Virus record (IMG/VR): IMGVR_UViG_3300035703_000009
Coordinates: 62,001 to 126,000 of that record
Direction: 5' to 3' (one strand)
Length of the DNA: 64,000 nt
A program made the position numbers and the translations under genes. Below the pieces are notes generated by a model. The model was not told the DNA's origin. It worked only from the letters and a program-made list of their open reading frames with translations, and ran no database searches. Positions 37,534 through 52,015 of this stretch are shown here, piece by piece; within the stretch, counting starts at the first letter, position 1, and the number at the start of each line of letters is the position of its first letter.

Positions 37534-40500
37534 TTACAAATATTCTCTAAAAAGACCAACTTTATCTGCACCTGCTGCCAGGAATTGGTCGACGAAGAGC
37601 AAAAACAAAGGATTTGCAGGGCTTAATCGTTCCCAGGAAGGTATGTCATCTTGACTCACAACCGGATGGAGATTACGCACAGTCAGATAGCTAGGCTTAG
37701 TTGAATCGACCATCGAAAAAGAAAAGTTAGTAGTATCGAGCTTTGGTGTAGGAGGAAGAGGCACAGTAGCAGTTACATGGTCGGCGATTCCGGCTATCAA
37801 AGCAACTAGCATAGGTAATGGTGAGTTTGCGATTGGCCCCAATACTGTTTCAACGATCTTTAGCTTTTCTTGTATGACGTCAGTGTCCATTATTTGCATG
37901 GTGTTTGACTTTCCGGTGTTTTCCCTAATTTTAGTTATTCCTATAAATGTTGGAAGATATGGTGGAGCGATTGGTGGAAAGAAAGACGGCAATGAATATT
38001 GGATAGATTCAAGTAGGTTTATTTTGGTACCTTTTGCGCTCTTGAGCAAAGAAATTATCTTGTAAAACTGGTCTAATATTTTTTCTGCGATGTCAAAACC
38101 AAGGTCAATAAAGTTCTTAAGCACTGCAAGCAGATCACTTGGATTTATGCTTAAAAAATCAAAGTCTAGTGTGGAAAAAGATGGAAGAACATCACGATCA
38201 GACTGGGCAACTACGTTGCCTGAGCTAAATGGAGATGAAGTAGGAGCCTTGATAATGGACCTAGTTGATAGATTTGTGTTAACATCGTCCGGAGAGTCAT
38301 AATTGACGTTTGGTTTGTAACCTCCGTCTGAGATGGCACTCTTTTGCGAGTCATCAGGTTCACAGGTAACTATCTTTATGTCTGAGTCCAATTTAGTAGG
38401 TTGTGCAGGCTTAGAACTTAGTGCGGCAGCTTCGCCAGCAGTCAATGTACTGTCGGCCGGCGTTATTTGCTTTGGACTTGGAGCAGTATATTTCTTTGGA
38501 TCAGGAAGAGAGTTATCTAAGAAGTCCATTAGCGCATTAAGCAAGACTGGCTTTAGCAAGTTAAGGTCAATCTTGATGCGTGCTGGAAAAGGAGTTCGAG
38601 CAGGATTTGGAATCCTTAGCTCAAAAAGAGAAGCAAGTATGCCGGAAAACGATGCAGCAAAGGTCAGTAAGTTAAAGGCTGGCACTGGAATGGCTAAGTT
38701 AGCTGGGACCGTGTTCTTTATTATCCCAATGTATGAACTAGTTAGTTCTCTAGGTGAGATCGTTTTCTTATCGCCTACCAGCGACTTAAATTGCTTTGGA
38801 GTGAGGCTCTTTACGTAGCCATCGAGTACTAGTCTAACTGACTCAATGATTGGAATTGCAGGAGAAAGCCCACTAAGATCTAGCTGAAATCCGCTCTTGG
38901 CACAACACGGAGAAAAAGGATTAAAGTCTACTTTAAGCTGACCTAGTGCAGCAAGAGCGGCTGGAGTCAAGGCAAGTGCCTCTTTGACCCTAGCATTATC
39001 AAAAATGTCAGAAAATTGTACTTGTAGTGTTTGTAACTCTTTTTCTAGGTCTCTTTTTTTCTTTGGATCCTTTTCGGCATTTACCTTGTCCTTTTGAGAG
39101 TTTACTTTTGCAGCTTGAGCCTTTACTGCGGCTTCTCCACCGCTACCTTTGAGTGAATCGACCAGTGTTGAGTTGACGTCTAGCAAATACTTTTGGATCT
39201 TGTCAAAGTCTTTTTCAACGTCTAGTGATTGGCCAGAGGCTAGGTCTCCATCGATTTTCGTCTTAATCTTGGTCTTGTTCTTTGCTAATTGCACAAGGAG
39301 CATATTGCGAAGCTTTAAGCTGTCTTGTGAGATGAAGTTTGACTTATACATGCTAGAAAACTCAAGCACTTCATTTAAAAAGTCAAGGATGGCGTTCGGC
39401 TGTGGCTCGAGCTTGCTTGAGTCCTTTGGAATAGAGATGGTCGGAAACTTTAGTCGATCATAGTATGTCTTCATGTCAGCCTTGATCGCACTGATCTTTT
39501 CATCCATGTCGGAACCATCTATCTTTACCTGTTCACGAATGGTCTTGGCAGCTGCATCATCACCATTGGCTAGTGCTTGCTGTAAATTAAGTAAGAGCTG
39601 ATCTTGACGTTTAGTGATCTTTGTCTTTAGCTCGTTTGCTTTTGTCAGGTTAGGCTTGCCTAAATCATTGATGCGCTGATGGATCGCTCGCTTTGCGTCT
39701 TCGATCGCATCCTTAGCTGACTCGGTCTTATCTAGGATATTTTGAAGCCTTTCATGAGGTCCTAAATTGGATATTGATAGTTCTAAGTTTCTTTTCTCAC
39801 GAGCTACCTTAAGTAGGCGGTTTTTATTGCCTGAAGACTTTGCAGTTGACTCGACAACATTAAGAATGTTGCGTTGCTTTGCGACTTGAGCCTTTTGAGC
39901 TGAACTCAAGTTAAACTCTTTGCCGTCTATTGCTTCTTTTGCTAGTCTTTGTATCTTTTCACGATTTGCAAGGAATGCGACTGATTTTTGCACTCCAGGT
40001 TTGATAGATTCCTCATCACCTGAAAAACCGAACTTTGGAGAAGGTCCCCTAACTGTAAAGATGTGTTGCTTAAATCCTGTGCTCGACACAAAAAAGATGA
40101 TTGGTGAGATGAAGATGCCATTAATAGTCAAAAATATGACTATTGTGCCCATTGGAGTAGCAATTGAGACTAGCGGCAACCATATCACGGGTAAAGGAAT
40201 TTTAATGAGCCCGCCTGGAGTAGGAATCACAAAGCCAACTGGCCAGTACCTAAGCTGGTTAAAGTTAGGTAGGTTCGGCATGGGAATCAAGCCCATGATG
40301 TTTGCGACCAGCGAAAACTGTACCCAATAACAAAGCTGATTTGAACAAGGTAAAGTTGCATCGGTACCTTCAGTGATGCTTTTTAAATATAGAGGATCTT
40401 TTCCTAACTTGCCCATCACCGAGACACAGTTTGCAGGTTGGGTTTCCTGATCCATTTTGTCAAAACACTCTGGGCTCTGCTTTTTTAAGCGGGCTTTTAC

Positions 40501-42075
40501 CTTTTCTGGACTGGGCTTTAAGTCATCCATCACTCCCTTGATCCTTGCGATCTCCGAGCTAAGGTCAGAAAGAGCAGTGGCTACCGCTAAGTTTTGATTT
40601 TTGATTCCATTAACGATGTTGCGTAGTGTTGATGAAGAGTCAGTTGTGAACTTATTGACTCGACCAATGGCTAAAAGTAATTGGACTTCACGTCTAGCAA
40701 TGTTTCTAAACACTGCACGAATGCCGTCCTTTGCTGGATCGATTACTTGCATTCTTTTTTCCCTTTTCTTGTTGTCAAAAGTTACTTCAAAGTTTTGATA
40801 AAACTGTTGTAGCTTATCAAGATCCTTGACAAAGTATTCAGAACCATTTTCTCTCTTTTTCTCAGATTCAGTACCCTTGACTTTAGGATCGATTGCGGCA
40901 GCTTCAGTAGTTAATCCGCGATCGTCTAAAGTGAATAAGTTGTTGATTGGATCTGCAAGTAGATTGTAATAGTTGGTGTAGATCTTACCTAACACTGGAA
41001 CGTCTGTTGCTTGTGATAACTCATCTACTGAAAAAATGGATGAACTCGCAAAGAAGGACTGTTTTTCTAATAGAGAGTTACCTTTGACTGGAAAATCTAC
41101 TTTTTGATTTACATAAGTCTTGGTTTGCTGGTCTTGTACTTGGGTCTCAAGCTTGAAAGAAAAGAGCTGTGGAAAGTTGATCTTAAACTTAAAAAATGAT
41201 TGGTTTGCTGCCTGATTCACGGAAGTAGGAGCAGAACCTACTTCAAATACTTGGATGCACTGTGAATATGCAGAGATTTGAGACTGTATTTGAGTAAGCT
41301 GTGAACGGTCAATGTAGTTAGAATATAGGTTGGATAGCGCAGTAGAGATGTCTGAATTAGCCGCACCGCTATTTAAACCTCCAACTAAGGCATTATAATA
41401 CTTATTGTTAAAGACTGGAATCGATGCTTCCTTGCCTTTAAGAAGGTTTTGTTGTACTAGGACTTGTGACTCAAGGTTAGCGATGTTTAAGTTGATCATC
41501 TCAAGACTAACTGAGAGATTAGCGATATTTGCACCTTTAGTTATCTTATTAAGTAGAGTAGAGCGTTCGGTATTTGCTTGATCGAGCTTGATCTTTAGCT
41601 CTTTTTCCTTTTCTAAGACTGAACTAAATTCCTTTAGTATTCTGGCTAATTCGTTTGCCCTTTCCTCAAAATAAGAGGCAACTGGCTCAAAGTTATCTTG
41701 ATATTCGATTAGTTTATCATGTAAGGCTGAGTATTTGACATAGAGCTCGCGTTCTTTTTCAAGGGAAGCAGAAATGGTCTCGACCGAGTCTATACATTTT
41801 TTGACCGGATTAGCAGTTGGCGTGTTTTCAAGGTCTTGGATTAGTTTTTCAATGTCCGCCGTGCTTAGCTCCGGTAATAACTGTGGAGCTGGTTCTTCAC
41901 AGGGAAGCTCAGTGATCTGTCCAAAGGGAGCGCCTACTTCATCAGTAGGATCGCACAAGGATAGGTCATACAGCTCTTTGAGCTGTTGTTCAGTAAACTT
42001 GCTCTTGACTTCACTAGGAGGGATCCCGAGAACGTTTGCAATTTCATTGATGATTAAGTCGATAACTGAGTCCAT
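37534..42075 (-). CDS. Large (1513 aa) coiled-coil protein with hydrophobic segments, probable virion protein
   Basis: Late promoter ATAAATAA at 42081-42088; helical regions plus a hydrophobic, Pro-rich block. Confidence 0.7.
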   Translation of the reverse strand: MDSVIDLIINEIANVLGIPPSEVKSKFTEQQLKELYDLSLCDPTDEVGAPFGQITELPCEEPAPQLLPELSTADIEKLIQDLENTPTANPVKKCIDSVETISASLEKERELYVKYSALHDKLIEYQDNFEPVASYFEERANELARILKEFSSVLEKEKELKIKLDQANTERSTLLNKITKGANIANLSVSLEMINLNIANLESQVLVQQNLLKGKEASIPVFNNKYYNALVGGLNSGAANSDISTALSNLYSNYIDRSQLTQIQSQISAYSQCIQVFEVGSAPTSVNQAANQSFFKFKINFPQLFSFKLETQVQDQQTKTYVNQKVDFPVKGNSLLEKQSFFASSSIFSVDELSQATDVPVLGKIYTNYYNLLADPINNLFTLDDRGLTTEAAAIDPKVKGTESEKKRENGSEYFVKDLDKLQQFYQNFEVTFDNKKREKRMQVIDPAKDGIRAVFRNIARREVQLLLAIGRVNKFTTDSSSTLRNIVNGIKNQNLAVATALSDLSSEIARIKGVMDDLKPSPEKVKARLKKQSPECFDKMDQETQPANCVSVMGKLGKDPLYLKSITEGTDATLPCSNQLCYWVQFSLVANIMGLIPMPNLPNFNQLRYWPVGFVIPTPGGLIKIPLPVIWLPLVSIATPMGTIVIFLTINGIFISPIIFFVSSTGFKQHIFTVRGPSPKFGFSGDEESIKPGVQKSVAFLANREKIQRLAKEAIDGKEFNLSSAQKAQVAKQRNILNVVESTAKSSGNKNRLLKVAREKRNLELSISNLGPHERLQNILDKTESAKDAIEDAKRAIHQRINDLGKPNLTKANELKTKITKRQDQLLLNLQQALANGDDAAAKTIREQVKIDGSDMDEKISAIKADMKTYYDRLKFPTISIPKDSSKLEPQPNAILDFLNEVLEFSSMYKSNFISQDSLKLRNMLLVQLAKNKTKIKTKIDGDLASGQSLDVEKDFDKIQKYLLDVNSTLVDSLKGSGGEAAVKAQAAKVNSQKDKVNAEKDPKKKRDLEKELQTLQVQFSDIFDNARVKEALALTPAALAALGQLKVDFNPFSPCCAKSGFQLDLSGLSPAIPIIESVRLVLDGYVKSLTPKQFKSLVGDKKTISPRELTSSYIGIIKNTVPANLAIPVPAFNLLTFAASFSGILASLFELRIPNPARTPFPARIKIDLNLLKPVLLNALMDFLDNSLPDPKKYTAPSPKQITPADSTLTAGEAAALSSKPAQPTKLDSDIKIVTCEPDDSQKSAISDGGYKPNVNYDSPDDVNTNLSTRSIIKAPTSSPFSSGNVVAQSDRDVLPSFSTLDFDFLSINPSDLLAVLKNFIDLGFDIAEKILDQFYKIISLLKSAKGTKINLLESIQYSLPSFFPPIAPPYLPTFIGITKIRENTGKSNTMQIMDTDVIQEKLKIVETVLGPIANSPLPMLVALIAGIADHVTATVPLPPTPKLDTTNFSFSMVDSTKPSYLTVRNLHPVVSQDDIPSWERLSPANPLFLLFVDQFLAAGADKVGLFREYL

Positions 42076-42154: not shown

Positions 42155-44553
<2,399 letters not shown>

Positions 44554-45313: not shown

Positions 45314-45859
45314 TTATGATGGGTTATTTTTCAATTGGTTTTCAATGTGGTTAGCGATGATGATGACTGCTTCGTCCTGGATCCACCAGTGTTCTTTGCC
45401 ATTTACCGTCAACGAAAAGTCACCGTCGGATGGGTCAAGAACTACATTGGTGATCGATTGGATGGGATTGTGTCGAGCTCTATCGTTTTCCTCCATCTCA
45501 AGATGGATTTTACGTAAGGATTCAGGTAATTTACGAGCAGACTTATTATTCTCTTCCTGACGTTTTTTACGGCGTTCAGTGCGCGCTATGTGCTTTGTGT
45601 GATTATAGTAGTCAGTCGACTCACCAGTTGGACCATGTATAATGATGACTTCAAGGTCGCTCCAGTCGGTGACTTTTTCCCAGTTTTTAAGGATGAATAT
45701 CTTGGCACACTCTGCCACATGACTCATTGCTGCTATATGCTTACGGTACTCATTAAAAAAGTCTTTCTCTGTCCAAAAGATGGAATTGCGATAGCCATTT
45801 TCAAAGTCCTCTTCATTCATGAAGCAAGGAGTAAATATTTTTCCAGGTATCTGTTGCAT
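45314..45859 (-). CDS. Hypothetical protein
   Basis: 181 aa, preceded by promoter motif TAACC-N15-GTATTA (45869-45894). Confidence 0.75.
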   Translation of the reverse strand: MQQIPGKIFTPCFMNEEDFENGYRNSIFWTEKDFFNEYRKHIAAMSHVAECAKIFILKNWEKVTDWSDLEVIIIHGPTGESTDYYNHTKHIARTERRKKRQEENNKSARKLPESLRKIHLEMEENDRARHNPIQSITNVVLDPSDGDFSLTVNGKEHWWIQDEAVIIIANHIENQLKNNPS

Positions 45860-45891: not shown

Positions 45892-46185
45892 TTAAATTAT
45901 CTCACCCTTTGCGATCTCTTCAGCACGATTGAGAATGGTTAAGTGTTTCTCGATCTGCGCTCTCCACCAATCCCTGCTTAAGTTAGCATCTTGTGTGTCT
46001 GCAAAAATGGTGAATATCTTTTTAGGTATCACTTCCTCGTAAGTAGGACCATAGAATACCCATTTTTTCTTTATGATCACGACAGTACCTAGGTAAAATT
46101 CTGTACGTGTAGATTCGCCGTATTCACAGGCATCATAGAATGTTTGATACTGTAGATTTATTCCGTTTATGTTGATTTCTTTCAT
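45892..46185 (-). CDS. Hypothetical protein
   Basis: 97 aa ORF. Confidence 0.7.
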   Translation of the reverse strand: MKEININGINLQYQTFYDACEYGESTRTEFYLGTVVIIKKKWVFYGPTYEEVIPKKIFTIFADTQDANLSRDWWRAQIEKHLTILNRAEEIAKGEII

Positions 46186-46186
46186 A

Positions 46187-46672
46187 TTAGTCAGGGATTA
46201 CTATTTCGTTTGTAGCACGATATTCCAACTCTTGTGCATATAATTTATTTGCAAAACAATCAGTCGTACCGCGTTCGGCATTATATCGAATACACGCTTT
46301 AATCCACTCATTGCTCATTTGATGCATCGGTACCCAAGTTAAAGGTTGACGGCCGTCCTTGCCTCTACCGCCACGGTGAAAGTTCTCACGGATAACTTCA
46401 AACGGTGCATCAGAATAGACGCTGAGCTCAGTATAGAGTAAAGGGTCATTCCACTTTTTACCTATTAGTTTGAGCAAAAAGATCCATATCTTTAAAAGAA
46501 AGTTCTTTTTTGTTTCATTAACGTTTCGACGTAAGTATTCTGAACCACCGTCTACCATGTATTGATGGCCATTGTTATCGGTGTATGTAACATAGTCATG
46601 ACGATGCATTGACTTTAAGATAGTACCATCTGGTGTACGAATCTGATTTAGGATTATTTGTTTTTCTTCCAT
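46187..46672 (-). CDS. Conserved phage hypothetical protein
   Basis: TPDGTILKSMHRHDY and VDGGSEYLRR motifs typical of a widespread phage family. Confidence 0.75.
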   Translation of the reverse strand: MEEKQIILNQIRTPDGTILKSMHRHDYVTYTDNNGHQYMVDGGSEYLRRNVNETKKNFLLKIWIFLLKLIGKKWNDPLLYTELSVYSDAPFEVIRENFHRGGRGKDGRQPLTWVPMHQMSNEWIKACIRYNAERGTTDCFANKLYAQELEYRATNEIVIPD

Positions 46673-46736
46673 CTTTTTTAGATTTTATTTGTTATTAAAG
46701 TATTGATAGTTTATTTCTAAGTTTAGTAGTCCCATG

Positions 46737-48275
46737 TTATTTGCTGGCTAATTCAGCCACTCTTTTTCTGATTTGAGTTAATGTTGTTTGATTGTAAAGC
46801 TTACCGTCTTCAAAGATAGTTTGCAAAAGACCAGTTGCTTCTTGCTCTGGTGTGCATTCAGTATGGACAACATACTCACCGTCCTCTTCAGACACTGCAA
46901 CGAATCCTTTAAGTGATTTCTTGGTGCCGTCATCCGTTATTGGGTCCTTGTAGATGTTGTAACCTACTCCATTGATCTCAAACCATGCGCCTTTGGCTGC
47001 AAAGCCTAAAGCATCGCGAGTGTTACATTGGTAGGTAAAGGAACCAACGCCTAAGACGATGTTAGTGGTTGCAAAACCATTCTCAGCAAGCTTCTCGTAA
47101 ATCTGAATCTGCCGTTCTAGTGTGATTGAGTCACCGTATATCGCTCCAATGTGAGAGTCAAGCAACTTGTAACCGGCCTCAGTGGTAGTGCCGCCGAATA
47201 TTTCCCATAGGAGTTGGATTACTCCTTTCTTTTCGTCCGTTGAAATCCACTTGCCAGTCTCATTAACTCGATAGCCAAGGACTGATCTATCTACTCCATG
47301 TTCAACAGTAACTTCATAGTCATGGTAGCCACAAACGATTCGAACCGGATCTCCTGAGTCAGGGCGTATCACCAGCTTACCGTTGCGTGCCATGATCTTG
47401 GCCTTGTTTTCAGGCAAGTATTTAGTGATCAGAGTCCAAAGGTCAAATGTGTCGGATACGATGGATAAGATTCCTTCTGGGAATTGATCAAGGTAATAAT
47501 CGATCATCTTGCTCTCACCCATGGTAAAGATGCACGTGGTAGAAACTGAGTGTTCTGACGCATTCACTGAGCTGATGCAGACTTCATTAGTCGGCTCATC
47601 GTAGAAGTAGCGAGCAGCCGGAATGACTACTAGTGTGTCTGAGCCGCGAAAGGATGTGGCATGACCCAGGCCAGATGTCATCATGTCCCAAGGAGACAGA
47701 CCACGTGCGCTAAAGTCGTGAGCTAAGTAGTCAATCAACCACTTGTTTGCAGGATCTGTCTTTGCTACCCATTGTGCTAGATTGCGACGATACTGCAGAG
47801 CGATCGTTGCTGATGTAGTTGGTTTCCAAGCAATGGAACTGATGATCGTCTCTAGATAAAGAGTTAACCACGCAAAACCATCAACGGTATTGATGAAGGT
47901 CATGTGAGGTATGTTTGGATTGGTCTCTATTCCCTCAGGAAGAGACTTGATTCGTATCGGTAAGTAACCCAGGTCGTGTAGTGCTTCAAAGTGAGAGCCA
48001 TCATATTTTAGACCTAGGTACATGCACATGTCTTTTGTAAAGATTAATGCAGCATCTTTAGGTAGCTCAAAAAAGTTTTCTTGAAACTCGTCACGAAGCC
48101 AGCGAACTACCAGTTGCTGGCCGAACGACAGGATCTTTTTGACGCCAGTTGGCGCGTACTTTAGGCTACGTGGGATCCATGTGCCATATAGTTTTTGGGT
48201 GCCTGGCGCAAGCATTCTTTTATGGCCTATCTTATAGCCATCTGTGTAGTACAGGGCAGTTGGTTTAAAACTCAT
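46737..48275 (-). CDS. NAMPT-family enzyme (Namat-like, NARP1)
   Basis: TDGYKIGH, HDFSARG, ASEHSV, SIVSDTFD, VIRPDSGDP, IYGDSIT, KKSLKG. Confidence 0.92.
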   Translation of the reverse strand: MSFKPTALYYTDGYKIGHKRMLAPGTQKLYGTWIPRSLKYAPTGVKKILSFGQQLVVRWLRDEFQENFFELPKDAALIFTKDMCMYLGLKYDGSHFEALHDLGYLPIRIKSLPEGIETNPNIPHMTFINTVDGFAWLTLYLETIISSIAWKPTTSATIALQYRRNLAQWVAKTDPANKWLIDYLAHDFSARGLSPWDMMTSGLGHATSFRGSDTLVVIPAARYFYDEPTNEVCISSVNASEHSVSTTCIFTMGESKMIDYYLDQFPEGILSIVSDTFDLWTLITKYLPENKAKIMARNGKLVIRPDSGDPVRIVCGYHDYEVTVEHGVDRSVLGYRVNETGKWISTDEKKGVIQLLWEIFGGTTTEAGYKLLDSHIGAIYGDSITLERQIQIYEKLAENGFATTNIVLGVGSFTYQCNTRDALGFAAKGAWFEINGVGYNIYKDPITDDGTKKSLKGFVAVSEEDGEYVVHTECTPEQEATGLLQTIFEDGKLYNQTTLTQIRKRVAELASK

Positions 48276-48284
48276 ATTGTAGAT

Positions 48285-48773
48285 TTATTTTTTAAGTATG
48301 ACTATGGTTACTATACAATCTTTTAGCTCGCGTTTAATGATTTGCTTGATTTTTTCCCAGTCTCCACCGGCAAGACCCGCACCAATCATCGGTAAACCGA
48401 TATGCATGCCCTTAAAGTTATGGTTGATCTTTCGCATGCACAGGGTGATTGCATCATAATCGACTGGCACGGCATCACCATCTGCGTGGTTACGTCCATA
48501 TTTGTATTGAGTGTATGCATTAAGCACGAAAACTCCGCGTTTCATGTCCGCCCTAGAGACCAGTACCCCATCAATCTGACCAAGCTTATTGATGTCGCCT
48601 CGATATTGAGTGTTTTCTAACTTAAATAGGTCACAACCAAATGCCGATGCCATGTGAGGAGCTAAGCCGGCTCCCATGGTGCACATGCAGTTACAACCGT
48701 GTGCGATCACGTCAAACTCTCCATCTTTTGCAAGGGTGATTAAGTTGCCAAACACTTCAGTATAGTTATTCAT
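48285..48773 (-). CDS. Macrodomain (ADP-ribose binding/hydrolase)
   Basis: GNL, IAHGCNCMCTMGAGLA, NAYTQ, PMIGAGLAGGDW; start moved to ATG 48773. Confidence 0.88.
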   Translation of the reverse strand: MNNYTEVFGNLITLAKDGEFDVIAHGCNCMCTMGAGLAPHMASAFGCDLFKLENTQYRGDINKLGQIDGVLVSRADMKRGVFVLNAYTQYKYGRNHADGDAVPVDYDAITLCMRKINHNFKGMHIGLPMIGAGLAGGDWEKIKQIIKRELKDCIVTIVILKK

Positions 48774-49263
48774 GGTTTTCGAGTATTTGTAGTGAGGCCT
48801 GAAGTAGGTCATCGAACTTTGAGTAGTTTGGAACGCGGTAACGATCACACACGATGTCAACGTTACCCTTGCGCCAAAAACCTTCTGGACAGCACACTAG
48901 TAGCTTATCAGAGTCTGCAAACTTGCCTAGCTCTAATAGGGAGATAGGTGACTTGGTGTTAGGATCAAAATACATGATGATTAGAGTTGCCTCCTCCAAT
49001 GCGGTCAATTCCCAGTTTACTTGTTGGTAGAAGTTGGCGTTTTCAAACGTTTGTTCCCAACTGGAGTCCCAGTCTTCTCTACGCGGACTGTAAACTACTA
49101 CTTCTACTCCATTTTCTTCGTAAAACTGGATGGCTTTCTTTTGCCAGTCCTCTGCCTTACCCATTTCAATGCTGCCTGCAAGAAAGATGGAAGGCTTGGT
49201 TGAATCTGAGTCTCTAAAGATCGGAGCTGGTGGTTTGATAACGTGGACGGATTGATTTTTCAT
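48766..49263 (-). CDS. Nucleoside 2-deoxyribosyltransferase-like N-glycosidase
   Basis: IFLAGSIE, PRREDWD, QVNWE, PISLLELG with the catalytic Glu. Confidence 0.8.
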   Translation of the reverse strand: MKNQSVHVIKPPAPIFRDSDSTKPSIFLAGSIEMGKAEDWQKKAIQFYEENGVEVVVYSPRREDWDSSWEQTFENANFYQQVNWELTALEEATLIIMYFDPNTKSPISLLELGKFADSDKLLVCCPEGFWRKGNVDIVCDRYRVPNYSKFDDLLQASLQILENHE

Positions 49264-49278
49264 AAAGTATATGTTATT

Positions 49279-50163
49279 TTAAAAGACATCAAGTTGACCT
49301 ACTACTGAGTTTTCAATGTCTGAATAGCTATTGCTACAGTAGATGCCGTCAAGATGCTTACTAAGCTCATCAAAGCCTGCTGAAAATATGCCGTGTGAAA
49401 CGACTAGGTAAATCTTGCCAGTTCTTTCAGGCTGGGTCTTTTTGATCTCTTCGGCGATGTTTAAGAAAGTTCGACCGCCGTCACAGATGTCATCGATGAT
49501 GATTAGATTCTTTGAGTAGTGATCGATTCTGACTGGCACGTGAGTCTTACTCAGTTTACCATCGGTGTCTCGATACTTGCTACAGGTAAGGACCTCACCT
49601 GTGAATTGTAGGTTCTTAGCAACAGTATAGATCTTCTTTAGACTACCTGCGTCAGGTGAAACAAAGACGCATGATTCTAGGAAAGAGCTGACTGCTAGGT
49701 CTCGATTAGCTGCCACACGACTGATGAATGAGCTGACTATTTGAGTATTGTCAACCACTTTAAGTCGATTGATGCAGGCAGCTGCGACATCTGAGTGAAC
49801 ATCAATGCAGGTGACGCTCTCGAACTCCAATGAGTTTAGGATAGGAGCGATCACGTCTCGTAAGTAAGAAGTTCCACCTTCAACGAACTGTCGATCGCTG
49901 CGAGCTCCCATCACGTAAGGAACATACAGGTGGATTTCTTTGACTCCAAGATTACGAAGAGCTTTGGTAGCGCAGATGATTATCTCAAGATCCTTAAAGG
50001 AGTTGAAACGTGATCTGATCTCGACCATGTCTTTTTTTGGATTGATGCTTGAATGAATGGATACTGCATCAAGCAACTGAATGTCCTGCTGGCCGTCTGG
50101 AAAACGGGAGATTTTGTACTTGATTTCTGAGCAAGACTGGTCAACTAAATTTAAGATTTTCAT
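49279..50163 (-). CDS. Ribose-phosphate pyrophosphokinase-like enzyme (Adps-like, NARP1)
   Basis: FPDGQ, PYVMGARSDR, DVHS, SPDAGS, IIDDICDGGRTF, VSHGIFS. Confidence 0.9.
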   Translation of the reverse strand: MKILNLVDQSCSEIKYKISRFPDGQQDIQLLDAVSIHSSINPKKDMVEIRSRFNSFKDLEIIICATKALRNLGVKEIHLYVPYVMGARSDRQFVEGGTSYLRDVIAPILNSLEFESVTCIDVHSDVAAACINRLKVVDNTQIVSSFISRVAANRDLAVSSFLESCVFVSPDAGSLKKIYTVAKNLQFTGEVLTCSKYRDTDGKLSKTHVPVRIDHYSKNLIIIDDICDGGRTFLNIAEEIKKTQPERTGKIYLVVSHGIFSAGFDELSKHLDGIYCSNSYSDIENSVVGQLDVF

Positions 50164-51104
50164 TCAAAACTGAATTTATTTGGAGTTAATAAAAGACTAC
50201 TTTCTGTTGATGCTGAGTCGGTACGATATTTTAGGACTGCTAGATCTTTGGCTTTTGCCTCGACCTCAACATCCACATCCAAGTCATAGTGAGGAATGAC
50301 CTCATAAATGTAATCGGCATGCGATCGATTGAGAGCGCTGGCATCTTCGTACAATCTAGTACTACTATAGTGCTGCAGCGGTTTATGTTTGTACCAAGTA
50401 GAAGCTGCAAGGTGTGCGGCTTCTTGCGGAGAGAGACCGCTTGTGCAGAATCTATGATGTAGGTGGTCAAAGGTGATCGGGCAGCCTACTCCATTATAGA
50501 TGCCGTCATATAGGTCAAGCACGCTGAACTGGGTGGCTTTATCGTCATTTTCGACAACAAGGCGGGCCTTGGTAGAGTCAGCCAGGCGATCGAAGTTTGT
50601 GCAAAACCGCTGGATTGCAGAAGGCTTGTCGCCATATGTGCCGCCGATATGGATGTTGATTGGTGCGGCATAGCTTTTAGGCAGCTGCATGAGATCCATG
50701 ATGCGTGCGTGCTGGTCCAGATCATATATCGTCTTGTCGACTATACTTTGAGTAGGAGAAGCAAGCACATCGAACTGGCCTGGGTGAAAGGAGATGCGCA
50801 AGTTGTGTTGGTGCACGAACTCGCCGATTTGCTGCATGATCCCTACTAGCTTATCATAGTTAGGTAGCTGTTCGAACATATACTCGCTCATCCAAGGAAA
50901 TATGTCACTGGACATGCGATAGACTCTAATGTCATGCTCTAGGTTCCACTGCAGTATCTTACAAAGATCTTGTAGGTTCTGTTCAGCAAGTAGAGCCGCT
51001 CGAGCAATGCCTTGTTCTAGCCATGTCTTTTTGACCATGCCTCGATTTATAGTAATCCCTTGCTCACGCAAGCTAAGGTTGATGCAACAATATCCTAATC
51101 TCAT
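50160..51104 (-). CDS. uvsE: UV-damage endonuclease
   Basis: RLGYCCIN, RMSSDIFP, FHPGQF, VENDD, FDHLHH, SHAD, EAKAKD. Confidence 0.92.
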   Translation of the reverse strand: MRLGYCCINLSLREQGITINRGMVKKTWLEQGIARAALLAEQNLQDLCKILQWNLEHDIRVYRMSSDIFPWMSEYMFEQLPNYDKLVGIMQQIGEFVHQHNLRISFHPGQFDVLASPTQSIVDKTIYDLDQHARIMDLMQLPKSYAAPINIHIGGTYGDKPSAIQRFCTNFDRLADSTKARLVVENDDKATQFSVLDLYDGIYNGVGCPITFDHLHHRFCTSGLSPQEAAHLAASTWYKHKPLQHYSSTRLYEDASALNRSHADYIYEVIPHYDLDVDVEVEAKAKDLAVLKYRTDSASTESSLLLTPNKFSFE

Positions 51105-51142
51105 ATTGCTAATGTACTACAAATGGGTGAAAACTAAAAATT

Positions 51143-51242
51143 CCGCGAGCGGGCGCCCTACTAGAGTAGCTATTATAGTAATAATTATAGTAAGAATAGA
51201 GTAATACTATAGTACTACTATAGCTACACCCACCCACCACCC
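51143..51242. other. Structured intergenic element at a strand switch (candidate origin or ncRNA)
   Basis: GC clamp, 62 nt imperfect AT-rich inverted repeat at 51166-51227, and a CCCACCCACCACCC tract. Confidence 0.45.
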
Positions 51243-51246
51243 ATTG

Positions 51247-51324
51247 TTGTACTAGCAAAAAAGCTTATGGTTTTGAGAATAAATATCATATTGAGTAGAA
51301 CTCTTTAATAACTTCAACGTATAA
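51247..51324. promoter_or_regulatory. Back-to-back bipartite promoters: minus AAACC-N16-GTACAA (51247-51273) and plus GAACT-N16-GTATAA (51298-51324)
   Basis: Both match the recurring motif. Confidence 0.65.
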
Positions 51325-51355
51325 TCATTTTAGGCCTTAAAATTATCCACAATGA

Positions 51356-52015
51356 ATGACCATTGTCAGCATAGACTTTTCCATCTTATATCCTGGAGTC
51401 TGCATCTGCAGAGATTTTACCAAGTTTAAGTGGATAGCGTTAGCTAATACTAACGTTAGAAAAAAGGATTCAGATAACTTTGATTACGTTAACTCAACTT
51501 ATCCAAACATAAAGATCTTAAGAACTACTACTAGAAGAAAAAAAGAGCAAGAATATCATCTAACTGAAAGAACCAAGCTAATCAATTACCTTGAAGCAAT
51601 CGATCTACTCGTTTCTGAAATAGAAAAAGAAGTAAATGGAGAAGACGTTCTTGCATGTCTCGAAGGAATATCCTTTGGTTCTAGCGGTAACTCGCTAGTT
51701 GACATCTCACAAGCGACTGGCATCTTAAAGTATCACTTAACTACTAGAATCCTAAAGAATCAACACGATAGATTTTTTATCTTTAGCCCAAGCGAGCTCA
51801 AAAACGCGATAGGTTGCAAAGGTAATGCAAACAAAAACGACATACTAGCGAAATTTAAGAGCGACCCAATCATAGAATCGGTAAAGCAATCTGACTTATT
51901 TAAACTCGTCAACCAAGAAAAATGGATATTAGAAGGAGACAAGATCCTTTCGCCTATTACTGACATGATTGATTCCTATTTAGGGGTGGTCAAGGTACAT
52001 GGGCTCTTAAAATAA
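51356..52015 (+). CDS. RuvC-like Holliday junction resolvase
   Basis: SIDFS..PGVC, LEGISFGS, SPSELK, DMIDSY. Confidence 0.8.
   Translation: MTIVSIDFSILYPGVCICRDFTKFKWIALANTNVRKKDSDNFDYVNSTYPNIKILRTTTRRKKEQEYHLTERTKLINYLEAIDLLVSEIEKEVNGEDVLACLEGISFGSSGNSLVDISQATGILKYHLTTRILKNQHDRFFIFSPSELKNAIGCKGNANKNDILAKFKSDPIIESVKQSDLFKLVNQEKWILEGDKILSPITDMIDSYLGVVKVHGLLK

What the first reader, a model, noticed from the sequence alone, without database searches (positions are those of the whole stretch)
46737..50163. Four-gene expanded NAD+ reconstitution locus: PRS-like + NDT-like glycosidase + macrodomain + NAMPT-like
Seen: four tightly packed co-oriented genes with gaps of 15 nt or less, or overlaps. 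Known: a PRS-like Adps plus NAMPT-like Namat pair is the phage NARP1 pathway, which rebuilds NAD+ from ADP-ribose and nicotinamide after NAD-depleting defences such as Thoeris, SIR2 and TIR effectors. Here two extra enzymes sit between that pair. One is a macrodomain, a family that removes ADPR from DNA or protein or processes ADPR derivatives. The other is an NDT-like N-glycosidase with an intact LELG Glu, a flavodoxin-like fold related to TIR/MilB/DNPH1. Inference: the extras may feed NARP1 by freeing ADPR from DarT-type modified DNA, modified proteins or ADPR-based immune signals. That would couple signal or mark removal to NAD+ recovery, and this is the best candidate for an undescribed system in the window.
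Basis: partly seen in the sequence, partly recalled or inferred. Interest (0 to 1): 0.8.

Follow-up and report, generated by a model that had tools for sequence, protein, structure and literature searches.

The report
Phage NAD-rebuilding operon with extra enzyme
A freshwater phage carries the known three-gene kit that rebuilds the cell's NAD+ after a bacterial defence destroys it, and a fourth, uncharacterised sugar-bond-cutting enzyme that turns up beside this kit in many phages and bacteria sits inside it.

Summary
Four co-oriented minus-strand genes (46737-50163) are packed with a 15-nt gap, an 8-nt overlap and a 9-nt gap.

Three of them are homologues of the validated NARP1-AP pathway of Vibrio phage Gary:
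- Adps, the PRS-like gene.
- Namat, the NAMPT-like gene.
- Adpp, the macrodomain, an ADPR-1''-phosphate phosphatase that counters aRES defence.
The essential residues of all three are conserved. That part was published in January 2026, and the macrodomain's known role is not DarT-type mark removal.

The fourth gene is a PF15891 NDT-like (DrHyd) protein with an invariant Glu in LLELG. No function is known for it, and I found no paper linking it to NARP1. The link itself is robust:
- Namat lies within 6 kb of 25 of 56 dereplicated viral NDT homologues, in several gene orders and clades. The neighbouring UvdE gene gives 1 of 18.
- The same subfamily sits in NrtR-headed bacterial operons with Adps, Namat, NADAR, KptA, a metallophosphoesterase and ARH.
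- It is fused elsewhere to ART, Nudix and metallophosphoesterase domains.

Most likely it cuts an N-ribosyl bond in an NAD+-derived compound to supply NARP1. The substrate is unknown.

The parts
49279..50163 (-). Adps: PRPS-like ADP-ribose pyrophosphokinase (ADPR + ATP -> ADPR-PP + AMP), first NARP1 enzyme
   Evidence: phrog_619 3.6e-56. TIGR01251 scores 85.8 bits, below its 113-bit cut-off for true PRPP synthases. 28% identity, E 6e-28, to the tested Adps of Vibrio phage Gary. K196 is invariant and aligns with Gary K192, whose mutation abolishes function. Carries the DDICDGG diphosphate-loop motif.
48766..49263 (-). NDT-like / DrHyd protein (PF15891), uncharacterised; predicted N-ribosyl hydrolase or transferase; recurrent NARP1 accessory
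   Evidence: PF15891 1.2e-34, full length; phrog_30579, unknown function. AF2 model pLDDT 92.6. Closest solved structure is 4MCJ, an uncharacterised Parabacteroides protein; then YtoQ, MilB, NDTs, DNPH1 and TIR domains. E111, R61, R62, R131 and four Trp are invariant in 44 homologues. Neighbourhood evidence.
48285..48773 (-). Adpp: Macro-domain ADPR-1''-phosphate phosphatase of the NARP1-AP pathway
   Evidence: phrog_335 4.9e-47; Pfam Macro weak, 1e-3. 37% identity, E 8e-23, to the tested Gary Adpp, with H25 aligned to its essential H24. Weak sequence match to yeast Poa1p, 6LFU/6LFQ. Start ATG 48773 overlaps the NDT stop by 8 nt.
46737..48275 (-). Namat: nicotinamide ADP-ribose transferase (ADPR-PP + nicotinamide -> NAD+ + PPi), second NARP1 enzyme
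   Evidence: phrog_448 5.4e-157. Best PDB hits 9W5X/9W5W at 2.6e-115, against about 1e-45 for true Nampt. 42% identity to Gary Namat, with H242 aligned to its essential H243. The selectivity-clamp motif GSFTYQCNTRD fits the Namat consensus of PMC12774641, except Cys at position 7, where most relatives have Tyr/Phe.
50160..51104 (-). UvdE UV-damage endonuclease: upstream neighbour, overlaps Adps by 4 nt; not part of the NAD+ module
   Evidence: PF03851 1.7e-55. Only 1 of 18 dereplicated viral UvdE loci carries NARP1. Relatives L210 and L235 have UvdE followed directly by homologues of the genes downstream of Namat, with no cassette.

Best explanation
The cluster is a phage NAD+ reconstitution operon of the NARP1-AP type with one additional, undescribed accessory enzyme.

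Inferred by homology to tested enzymes: Adps pyrophosphorylates ADP-ribose, and Namat joins the product to nicotinamide to remake NAD+ after NAD+-depleting defences. The Macro protein (Adpp) dephosphorylates ADPR-1''-phosphate, the product of RES-type (aRES) NAD+ phosphorolysis, so that it can enter the pathway.

Inferred from fold, conserved residues and gene context: the fourth protein is a catalytically competent NDT/DrHyd-fold enzyme that acts on an NAD+- or ADPR-derived nucleotide. The most likely mechanism is hydrolysis, or transfer to nicotinamide, of an N-glycosidic bond at the ribose that once carried nicotinamide. Candidate substrates are cADPR-type or N7-cADPR molecules, His-ADPR, or another ADPR-N-conjugate. 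The released ADPR would then go to Adps. This would extend NARP1 to a further class of defence products, as Adpp does for ADPR-1''P and RyDEP does for 2'/3'cADPR.

My probabilities:
- Adps/Adpp/Namat assignment: about 0.85.
- The NDT-like protein works in NAD+/ADPR metabolism together with NARP1: about 0.75.
- The specific substrate class named here: about 0.35.
For: Homology to the tested Gary NARP1-AP, with all three essential residues conserved. Namat clamp motif and far better match to Namat structures than to Nampt.

NDT-like protein:
- PF15891, confident NDT fold, invariant Glu in the S-x5-E-L-G helix, four invariant basic residues and several invariant aromatics.
- Of 56 dereplicated viral NDT loci, Namat is present in 25 (within three genes in 20), Adps in 21, Macro in 9 and NADAR in 6. 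No other family exceeds 9.
- Gene orders differ between loci.
- The association occurs in several clades of the NDT tree: 12 label changes, at least 4 forced by well-supported branches.
- Reverse view: 15 of 35 viral Namat loci have an NDT within 8 kb.
- Control: UvdE gives 1 of 18, Fisher p = 0.002.
- L261, a related phage, has the canonical Adps-Macro-Namat order with a different NDT lineage 2 kb downstream. This shows independent placement.
- Bacteroidota genomes carry NrtR-Adps-[NADAR-KptA-metallophosphoesterase-DUF4291]-NDT-Namat-[ARH] operons.
- Domain fusions of PF15891 with metallophosphoesterase and Nudix, and with an ART-PolyVal ADP-ribosyltransferase in a polyvalent protein next to the portal gene.

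Precedents: accessory enzymes feeding NARP1. From my own knowledge, the ADP-ribosyl cyclase/CD38 clade of the same superfamily hydrolyses cADPR.
Against: - No enzymatic datum exists for any PF15891 member. The closest solved structure is an uncharacterised structural-genomics target.
- About half of the viral NDT loci, and 49 of 64 bacterial ones, show no NARP1 gene within 6 kb. The four isolate phages I inspected have the NDT gene in other contexts.
- Immune signals are far less abundant than the NAD+ pool, so 'feeding' would be a minor benefit. In bacterial housekeeping operons an immune-signal substrate makes little sense.
- Fusion to Nudix and metallophosphoesterase fits a mononucleotide substrate such as NMN equally well.
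- The equivalence of E111 to the NDT/DNPH1 nucleophile rests on motif and fold, not on a residue-level structural alignment.
- Namat has Cys where most relatives have an adenine-stacking Tyr/Phe.
Confidence: 0.68

Rival explanations
1. The NDT-like protein is a pyridine-nucleotide nucleosidase (NMN, NaMN or nicotinamide riboside -> nicotinamide + ribose phosphate). It supplies the nicotinamide half of the Namat reaction, for instance from NMN left by NAD+-dependent ligase or by defences that split NAD+ into AMP and NMN.
For: The nearest characterised fold relatives (MilB, DNPH1) are nucleoside-monophosphate N-glycosidases. The S-x5-E-L-G motif resembles the DNPH1 phosphate-binding and nucleophile segment (my recollection). 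Fusions and adjacency with Nudix and metallophosphoesterase domains, which could make NMN from NAD+. The Metis defence yields AMP + NMN.
Against: Nicotinamide is released 1:1 with ADPR by the usual NADases, so it should not be limiting. NMN cleavage gives no ADPR, so NARP1 still could not run after an AMP+NMN type cleavage. Four invariant basic residues and many aromatics suggest a larger ligand than NMN (inference only).
Confidence: 0.2
2. The NDT-like gene is an ordinary nucleotide-pool enzyme (a dNMP/NMP N-hydrolase or deoxyribosyltransferase, as its Pfam name says). It merely lies in the same early nucleotide-metabolism block as NARP1.
For: Pfam and record names. In isolate jumbo phages the homologue is not next to NARP1. 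The window's cluster lies in a long block with RNR, polymerase, helicase and exonucleases.
Against: No dNTP-metabolism family is enriched near NDT homologues; the enriched ones are Namat, Adps, Macro and NADAR. The UvdE control shows that synteny alone does not give the association. In bacteria it sits in NrtR-regulated ADPR/NAD operons. It is fused to an ADP-ribosyltransferase domain.
Confidence: 0.1
3. The pair is classical salvage rather than NARP1: the PRS-like enzyme makes PRPP and the NAMPT-like enzyme makes NMN, as in NARP2-type logic. The two middle genes would then be unrelated to ADPR recycling.
For: Pfam and NCBIfam name the proteins as PRPP synthase-like and nicotinate/nicotinamide phosphoribosyltransferase. 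Namat retains Nam-PRPP catalysis in vitro according to PMC12774641. Cys replaces one adenine-stacking aromatic residue.
Against: The PRS-like protein scores below the trusted cut-off of every true Prs model, and its match to true PRPS structures is weak (best E 4e-10) while it aligns to a tested Adps over 241 residues. Namat matches Namat structures at 1e-115 against 1e-45 for Nampt, and carries the Namat-specific GSxxxxxxTRD motif. No Nmnat homologue is adjacent. The Adpp homologue only makes sense with an ADPR-using pathway.
Confidence: 0.06
4. The NDT-like protein is a non-catalytic binder (sponge) of an ADPR-derived immune signal, or a regulatory partner of Adps or Namat.
For: The TIR/DrHyd/SLOG class includes non-catalytic nucleotide sensors (PMC9503650). 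The protein is small and standalone, like known sponges.
Against: The nucleophile-position Glu, a second acidic residue and the basic cluster are invariant across 44 diverged homologues. Its presence in bacterial metabolic operons argues for an enzyme.
Confidence: 0.05

Closest known systems
NARP1-AP of Vibrio phage Gary (Adps-Adpp-Namat; Osterman et al., bioRxiv 10.64898/2026.01.28.702374)
   Same: The same three protein families in one co-oriented operon, with the Macro gene between Adps and Namat. Identities are 28%, 37% and 42%. The essential residues (Adps K192, Adpp H24, Namat H243) are conserved as K196, H25 and H242.
   Different: The window has a fourth gene, a PF15891 NDT-like protein, inserted between Adps and Adpp. 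That paper does not mention this family.
Core NARP1 (Adps + Namat; phages Bas63 and SPbetaL1; Osterman et al. 2024; PMC12774641; PMC13586617)
   Same: A PRPS-like enzyme paired with a Nampt-like enzyme. The Namat clamp motif GSx(phi)x(phi)x(phi)TRD is present. Best structural-sequence hits are the Namat crystal entries.
   Different: There are two accessory genes. Position 7 of the clamp motif is Cys rather than Tyr/Phe.
RyDEP next to NARP1 in mycobacteriophage DyoEdafos (bioRxiv 10.64898/2026.05.28.727677)
   Same: The same concept: a glycosidase encoded beside NARP1 turns an ADPR-derived defence product into linear ADPR, which NARP1 converts to NAD+.
   Different: RyDEP has a RyR-domain fold and cuts an O-glycosidic ribose-ribose bond. 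The window protein has an NDT/DrHyd fold, whose known members cut or transfer N-glycosidic bonds. There is no sequence or fold relation.
NDT / DNPH1 / MilB nucleotide N-glycosidases and transferases (DrHyd superfamily) and PDB 4MCJ (BDI_0649)
   Same: Flavodoxin-like fold. A Glu in the helix after strand 4. A Gly-Ser-Ile loop after strand 1. 40% identity to 4MCJ.
   Different: The match to the classical NDT family PF05014 is only marginal (E 0.002). The phage/NARP1 subfamily has its own invariant NPRRDDWDSSW and GFWRKGN motifs, which 4MCJ partly lacks. No member of PF15891 has a known substrate.
Viral SLOG-Macro-NADAR ADPr-processing neighbourhoods predicted by Iyer, Burroughs, Anantharaman and Aravind 2022 (PMC9503650)
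   Same: The predicted division of labour among ADPr-derivative-processing domains in large phages. An N-glycosidase of the TIR/DrHyd/SLOG class is combined with Macro and NADAR.
   Different: That survey assigns the role to YpsA-like SLOG domains, and states that among NAD-related DrHyd domains viruses carry only ARC-type versions. The PF15891-NARP1 link is not described there.

Membership tests
NARP1 (Adps + Namat) | A PRPS-like protein of the Adps clade rather than a true PRPP synthase | tested here: met
   phrog_619 3.6e-56. All true-Prs NCBIfam models score far below their cut-offs. E 6e-28 to the tested Gary Adps. The catalytic Lys is conserved. No outgroup-rooted tree was made.
NARP1 (Adps + Namat) | [quoted passage not shown] | tested here: inconclusive
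   The motif is present as GSFTYQCNTRD. Position 3 is Phe, but position 7 is Cys. Relatives show Y/F in 73 of 87 motifs and M in 9. The closest relative also has Cys. Overall similarity clearly favours Namat over Nampt.
NARP1 (Adps + Namat) | [quoted passage not shown] | tested here: met
   Both are on the minus strand, about 1 kb apart, with two genes between them.
NARP1 (Adps + Namat) | ADPR + ATP -> ADPR-PP, then ADPR-PP + nicotinamide -> NAD+ | not testable with these tools
   Needs purified proteins and LC-MS.
NARP1-AP | A Poa1p-like Macro-domain protein within two genes of the NARP1 genes | tested here: met
   Lies between Adps and Namat. 37% identity to the tested Adpp, with the essential His conserved. 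Weak direct match to Poa1p structures. Resembles the Table S1 sequences.
NARP1-AP | ADPR-1''-phosphate phosphatase activity and rescue from aRES defence | not testable with these tools
   Biochemical and plaque assays are required.
NDT-like / DrHyd, Pfam PF15891 | Match to the family model above the gathering score, over its full length | tested here: met
   119.3 bits against a cut-off of 30, profile positions 1-105 of 105.
NDT-like / DrHyd, Pfam PF15891 | Flavodoxin-like fold with the conserved Glu in the helix after strand 4 | tested here: met
   AF2 pLDDT 92.6. Foldseek gives 4MCJ at TM 0.80-0.86, then MilB, NDTs, DNPH1 and TIR. E111 is invariant. Residue-level equivalence is inferred from the motif.
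Nucleoside 2-deoxyribosyltransferase proper (PF05014) | Significant match to PF05014 and deoxynucleoside base-exchange activity | tested here: not met
   PF05014 scores only 18.6 bits, below its 28.8 cut-off. Activity is not testable here.
RyDEP | RyR Repeat12-like domain | tested here: not met
   No RyR-type Pfam hit, and the fold is NDT-like. Any resemblance is functional analogy only.

The most novel reading that the evidence does not exclude
The PF15891 NDT-like protein founds a new class of NARP1 accessory enzymes. It would be an N-glycosidase or transglycosidase that converts N-linked ADPR derivatives made by defence systems into ADPR, or with nicotinamide directly into NAD+ without ATP. 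Candidate substrates are N7-cADPR, canonical cADPR, His-ADPR and ADP-ribosylated bases. Such an enzyme would both silence Thoeris-type signalling, or undo non-canonical NAD+ depletion, and feed NAD+ reconstitution. The same enzyme would be a core part of an unrecognised NrtR-controlled ADPR-recycling regulon in Bacteroidota.
Probability: 0.3. Interest if true: 0.85.

Novelty: new variant of a known kind. Interest (0 to 1): 0.6.

Why it matters
NAD+ depletion and NAD+-derived signals are central to bacterial immunity. Each accessory enzyme found beside NARP1 so far has exposed a defence chemistry that plain NARP1 cannot handle: Adpp exposed aRES and ADPR-1''P, and RyDEP exposed 2'/3'cADPR.

A third accessory is common (more than 7,900 protein clusters at E <= 1e-5) and has no known substrate. 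It points to another NAD+-derived product or signal that phages must neutralise. It also gives a direct handle, one small soluble protein, to find that product.

The bacterial NrtR-headed operons suggest that ADPR-to-NAD+ recycling with a battery of ADPR-releasing enzymes is also a housekeeping pathway in Bacteroidota. That would change how 'phage-specific' NARP1 is seen.

Tried and rejected
- Megablast of the locus against isolate phages found nothing. The phage is known only from metagenomes.
- Literature searches gave nothing relevant: NARP1 with deoxyribosyltransferase; PF15891, Nuc_deoxyri_tr2 or 4MCJ; NADAR with deoxyribosyltransferase; NARP1 with DrHyd, nucleosidase, DUF4291 or NrtR. 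YtoQ papers gave no function. The 2012 de Souza and Aravind paper could not be fetched.
- A profile search of PDB sequences with the NDT alignment found only 4MCJ. No residue-level alignment to a characterised NDT, DNPH1 or MilB could therefore be produced.
- BFVD fold search returned only unnamed or generically named viral NDT-like proteins.
- No RNA sequencing run holding the locus was listed, so co-transcription is inferred from spacing only.
It was rerun without them.
- A DarG-like role for the Macro protein was considered and rejected: the NCBIfam DarG model scores 23 bits against a cut-off of 250, and the protein is much closer to the tested Adpp.
- The idea that UvdE belongs to the module was considered and rejected.


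Full report
THE OBSERVATION

Four co-oriented minus-strand ORFs occupy 46737-50163:
- A PRS-like gene, 49279-50163.
- A PF15891 NDT-like gene, 48766-49263.
- A macrodomain gene. The ORF runs to 48860, but the ATG at 48773 gives a 162-aa product. That start overlaps the NDT stop by 8 nt, as in relatives.
- A NAMPT-like gene, 46737-48275.

The spacings are a 15-nt gap, an 8-nt overlap and a 9-nt gap. A UvdE gene upstream overlaps the first gene by 4 nt.

Promoter-like and terminator-like sites are no more frequent than in shuffled sequence, so one transcript is likely. No RNA run was listed to show it.

The window comes from a 207-kb IMG/VR contig of a tailed phage with tail sheath, GroEL, RNR and replication genes. 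Near-identical DNA occurs in at least 20 lake and freshwater metagenome runs. Independent contigs are colinear across the four genes, so the arrangement is real.

THE THREE KNOWN GENES

Osterman et al. (bioRxiv 10.64898/2026.01.28.702374) showed that 15% of 859 NARP1 operons carry a Macro-domain gene. [quoted passage not shown] It overcomes the aRES defence because the Macro protein, Adpp, dephosphorylates ADPR-1''-phosphate to ADPR.

I fetched the Gary operon and compared it with the window:
- Adps: 28% identity, E 6e-28.
- Adpp: 37% identity, E 8e-23.
- Namat: 42% identity, E 6e-118.

The residues whose mutation abolished function in that study are Adps K192, Adpp H24 and Namat H243. They are conserved in the window as K196, H25 and H242.

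The window's Namat matches the Namat crystal entries at 2.6e-115, against about 1e-45 for true Nampt. It carries the Namat-specific clamp motif of PMC12774641 as GSFTYQCNTRD. The one deviation is Cys at position 7, where 73 of 87 related motifs have Tyr or Phe. The closest relative shares the Cys.

The PRS-like protein scores below the trusted cut-off of every true PRPP-synthase model.

These three genes are therefore a member of a published system. The macrodomain's expected role is ADPR-1''P phosphatase, not removal of DarT-type marks.

THE FOURTH GENE

The 165-aa protein matches PF15891 over its full length at 1.2e-34, and the classical NDT family only marginally. PHROGs lists it as unknown, and NCBIfam has no model for it.

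An AlphaFold model built on 44 viral homologues is confident, with pLDDT 92.6. Its nearest solved structure is 4MCJ, an uncharacterised Parabacteroides structural-genomics target at 40% identity. YtoQ, MilB, NDTs, DNPH1 and TIR domains follow.

Across 44 homologues of 49-59% identity, these residues are invariant:
- E111, in S-P-I-S-L-L-E-L-G, at the start of the helix after strand 4.
- E33.
- R61, R62 and R131.
- W40, W65 and W84.
- N134.

This is the pattern of an active enzyme that binds a phosphorylated, base-bearing ligand. The equivalence of E111 to the NDT/DNPH1 nucleophile is my inference from motif and fold. I could not produce a residue-level alignment to a characterised enzyme.

The family is very large, with at least 7,970 protein clusters at E <= 1e-5, and essentially unnamed.

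IS THE NDT-LIKE GENE LINKED TO NARP1?

I fetched 80 IMG/VR loci holding homologues. I called and clustered their ORFs and dereplicated at 90% NDT identity, which left 56 groups. The neighbour families ranked as follows:
- Namat: 25 of 56 groups, within three genes in 20.
- Adps: 21 of 56.
- Macro: 9 of 56.
- GIY-YIG homing endonucleases, a Thg1-like protein and a small HAD-like protein: 9 each.
- NADAR: 6 of 56.

No dNTP-metabolism family is enriched.

Gene order varies between loci: Adps-NDT-Macro-Namat; Adps-x-NDT-Namat; Namat-NDT; Adps-Namat-NADAR-NDT; Adps-Macro-NADAR-x-NDT-Namat; and Macro-NDT-Namat.

On a tree of the 56 NDT proteins the NARP1-linked rows fall in several clades. There are 12 label changes, at least 4 of them forced by well-supported branches.

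In the reverse direction, 15 of 35 viral loci found with the window's Namat have an NDT homologue within 8 kb. Of the same 35, 12 have Macro, 9 have NADAR and 20 have the HAD-like protein.

As a control for mere synteny I repeated the procedure with the adjacent UvdE gene. Only 1 of 18 dereplicated groups (57 loci) has NARP1 nearby, Fisher p = 0.002.

That single locus, L261, is informative. It has UvdE-Adps-Macro-Namat in the canonical NARP1-AP order, and a different NDT lineage (50% identity) about 2 kb downstream, after an SPFH-domain gene. Two other relatives, L210 and L235, go from UvdE straight to homologues of the genes downstream of Namat. The cassette is therefore a variable island.

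The published base rate of NARP1 is 4.3% of phage genomes.

Against the link: about half of the viral loci and the four isolate phages I inspected show the NDT gene without NARP1 nearby.

EVIDENCE FROM BACTERIA AND FROM DOMAIN FUSIONS

The same subfamily, with the motifs FLAGSIEMG and GFWRKGNV at 50-60% identity, occurs in bacterial genomes and MAGs. In 15 of 64 dereplicated loci it lies in an NrtR-headed operon. These include Aquimarina amphilecti DSM 25232 and other Aquimarina isolates. The operon has the form NrtR-Adps-[NADAR-KptA/Tpt1-metallophosphoesterase-DUF4291]-NDT-Namat-[ADP-ribosylglycohydrolase].

NrtR is the ADPR-responsive regulator of NAD metabolism (established knowledge). The other genes all make or process ADPR derivatives.

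PF15891 domains are also fused to other domains:
- To metallophosphoesterase domains, in clusters of 300 and 80 members that are mostly viral.
- To Nudix domains (also a Klosneuvirus protein).
- To an ART-PolyVal ADP-ribosyltransferase domain in Tunturiibacter phage Tunturi_5. There an NDT domain 47% identical to the window's opens a 1,262-aa polyvalent protein encoded next to the portal gene.

Together these place the subfamily in NAD+/ADPR metabolism with good confidence.

MECHANISM

Inferred by homology to tested enzymes: Adps makes ADPR-PP, Namat makes NAD+, and Adpp converts ADPR-1''P to ADPR.

Inferred from fold and context: the NDT-like enzyme cleaves or transfers an N-ribosyl bond in an NAD+-derived nucleotide. 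I favour an ADPR-N-conjugate, such as cADPR-type rings, N7-cADPR, His-ADPR or ADP-ribosylated bases, that yields ADPR. Four points lead me there:
- The two characterised NARP1 accessories both convert a non-canonical product into ADPR.
- The superfamily includes ADP-ribosyl cyclases that hydrolyse cADPR (my knowledge).
- The protein co-occurs with, rather than replaces, Macro and NADAR. This suggests a distinct bond specificity.
- The basic and aromatic invariant residues suit a dinucleotide-sized ligand.

The main rival is an NMN or NR nucleosidase that supplies nicotinamide. The Nudix and metallophosphoesterase fusions fit that reading equally well. Nothing I could compute separates the two.

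COMPARISON WITH THE LITERATURE AND NOVELTY

None of the papers on NARP1, NARP1-AP, NARP3, RyDEP, Namat structure or Adps structure mentions an NDT-like or PF15891 gene.

The broad survey by Iyer et al. 2022 predicts that SLOG, Macro and NADAR domains share the work of processing ADPr derivatives in phages. It states that among NAD-related DrHyd domains viruses carry only ARC-type versions.

The four-gene locus is therefore a new variant of a known kind. It is NARP1-AP plus a recurrent, uncharacterised accessory.

Interest is moderate to high. Three quarters of the finding is already explained. The remaining gene is a well-supported, directly testable lead to another layer of the NAD+ arms race.

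Noticed in passing
L091-L118 (e.g. L100:7561-8000; L015:5553-5990): A small protein of about 145 aa lies directly between or beside Adps and Namat in 20 of 35 viral Namat loci, and in several bacterial operons. It has only a weak match to a HAD-type phosphatase family (NF046079, 1e-5). It occupies the position Adpp has elsewhere and may be an alternative phosphatase accessory of NARP1.
   Followed up: partly
L166, L171, L186, L197, L161, L164, L168, L180 (bacterial loci): Bacteroidota genomes, including Aquimarina isolates, carry NrtR-headed operons that combine Adps and Namat with NADAR, KptA/Tpt1, a metallophosphoesterase, DUF4291, the NDT-like gene and ADP-ribosylglycohydrolase. This looks like a large ADPR-recycling regulon, not described in the papers I read.
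   Followed up: partly
L264:3953-7741 (Tunturiibacter phage Tunturi_5, PP885688.1): A 1,262-aa polyvalent protein next to the portal gene starts with a PF15891 NDT-like domain, followed by an ART-PolyVal ADP-ribosyltransferase domain. It is annotated only as MutT/NUDIX hydrolase.
   Followed up: partly
window 46981-50024: In two lake metagenome runs a single 77-nt contig joins 46981 to 50024, skipping 3,042 bases: most of Namat, Macro, NDT and most of Adps. Depth is low (2-4) and only 24 letters lie on one side. It may be a cassette-less variant or an assembly artefact.
   Followed up: no
L210 and L235 (UvdE at 6001-6900/6963): Related phages have UvdE followed by one small ORF and then homologues of the window's genes at 46187-46672 and 45314-45859. 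They lack the four-gene cassette, which therefore behaves as an insertion/deletion island.
   Followed up: partly
L089:6997-8542: In a relative with 74% NDT identity, the Namat reading frame ends after about 275 aa, just past the conserved NASEHSV segment. A 244-aa ORF on the opposite strand follows. This may be a mobile-gene insertion that splits Namat. The contig ends soon after.
   Followed up: no
window 47040-47072 (Namat residues 402-412): The Namat selectivity-clamp motif has Cys at the position where most relatives have an adenine-stacking Tyr/Phe. The closest relative also has Cys and another has Met.
   Followed up: yes
window 37534-42075 and 42155-43795: A 1,513-aa ORF has no PHROG hit at E <= 1e-5. 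Beside it lies a phage-encoded GroEL-type chaperonin (phrog_5725, 1.9e-157).
   Followed up: no
window 46000-51400: Near-identical DNA is held by at least 20 public runs from lake, freshwater and subsurface metagenomes dated 2018-2025, so the phage is widespread in fresh water. The genes lack Shine-Dalgarno-like sequences, and the best bacterial NDT matches are Saprospiraceae MAG contigs. This hints at a Bacteroidota host, but the evidence is weak.
   Followed up: partly
L036, L043, L060, L064, L068, L083, L106: A Thg1-like gene (tRNA-His guanylyltransferase family, PF04446) recurs a few genes from Namat or NDT. GIY-YIG homing endonuclease genes are frequent in the same neighbourhoods.
   Followed up: no
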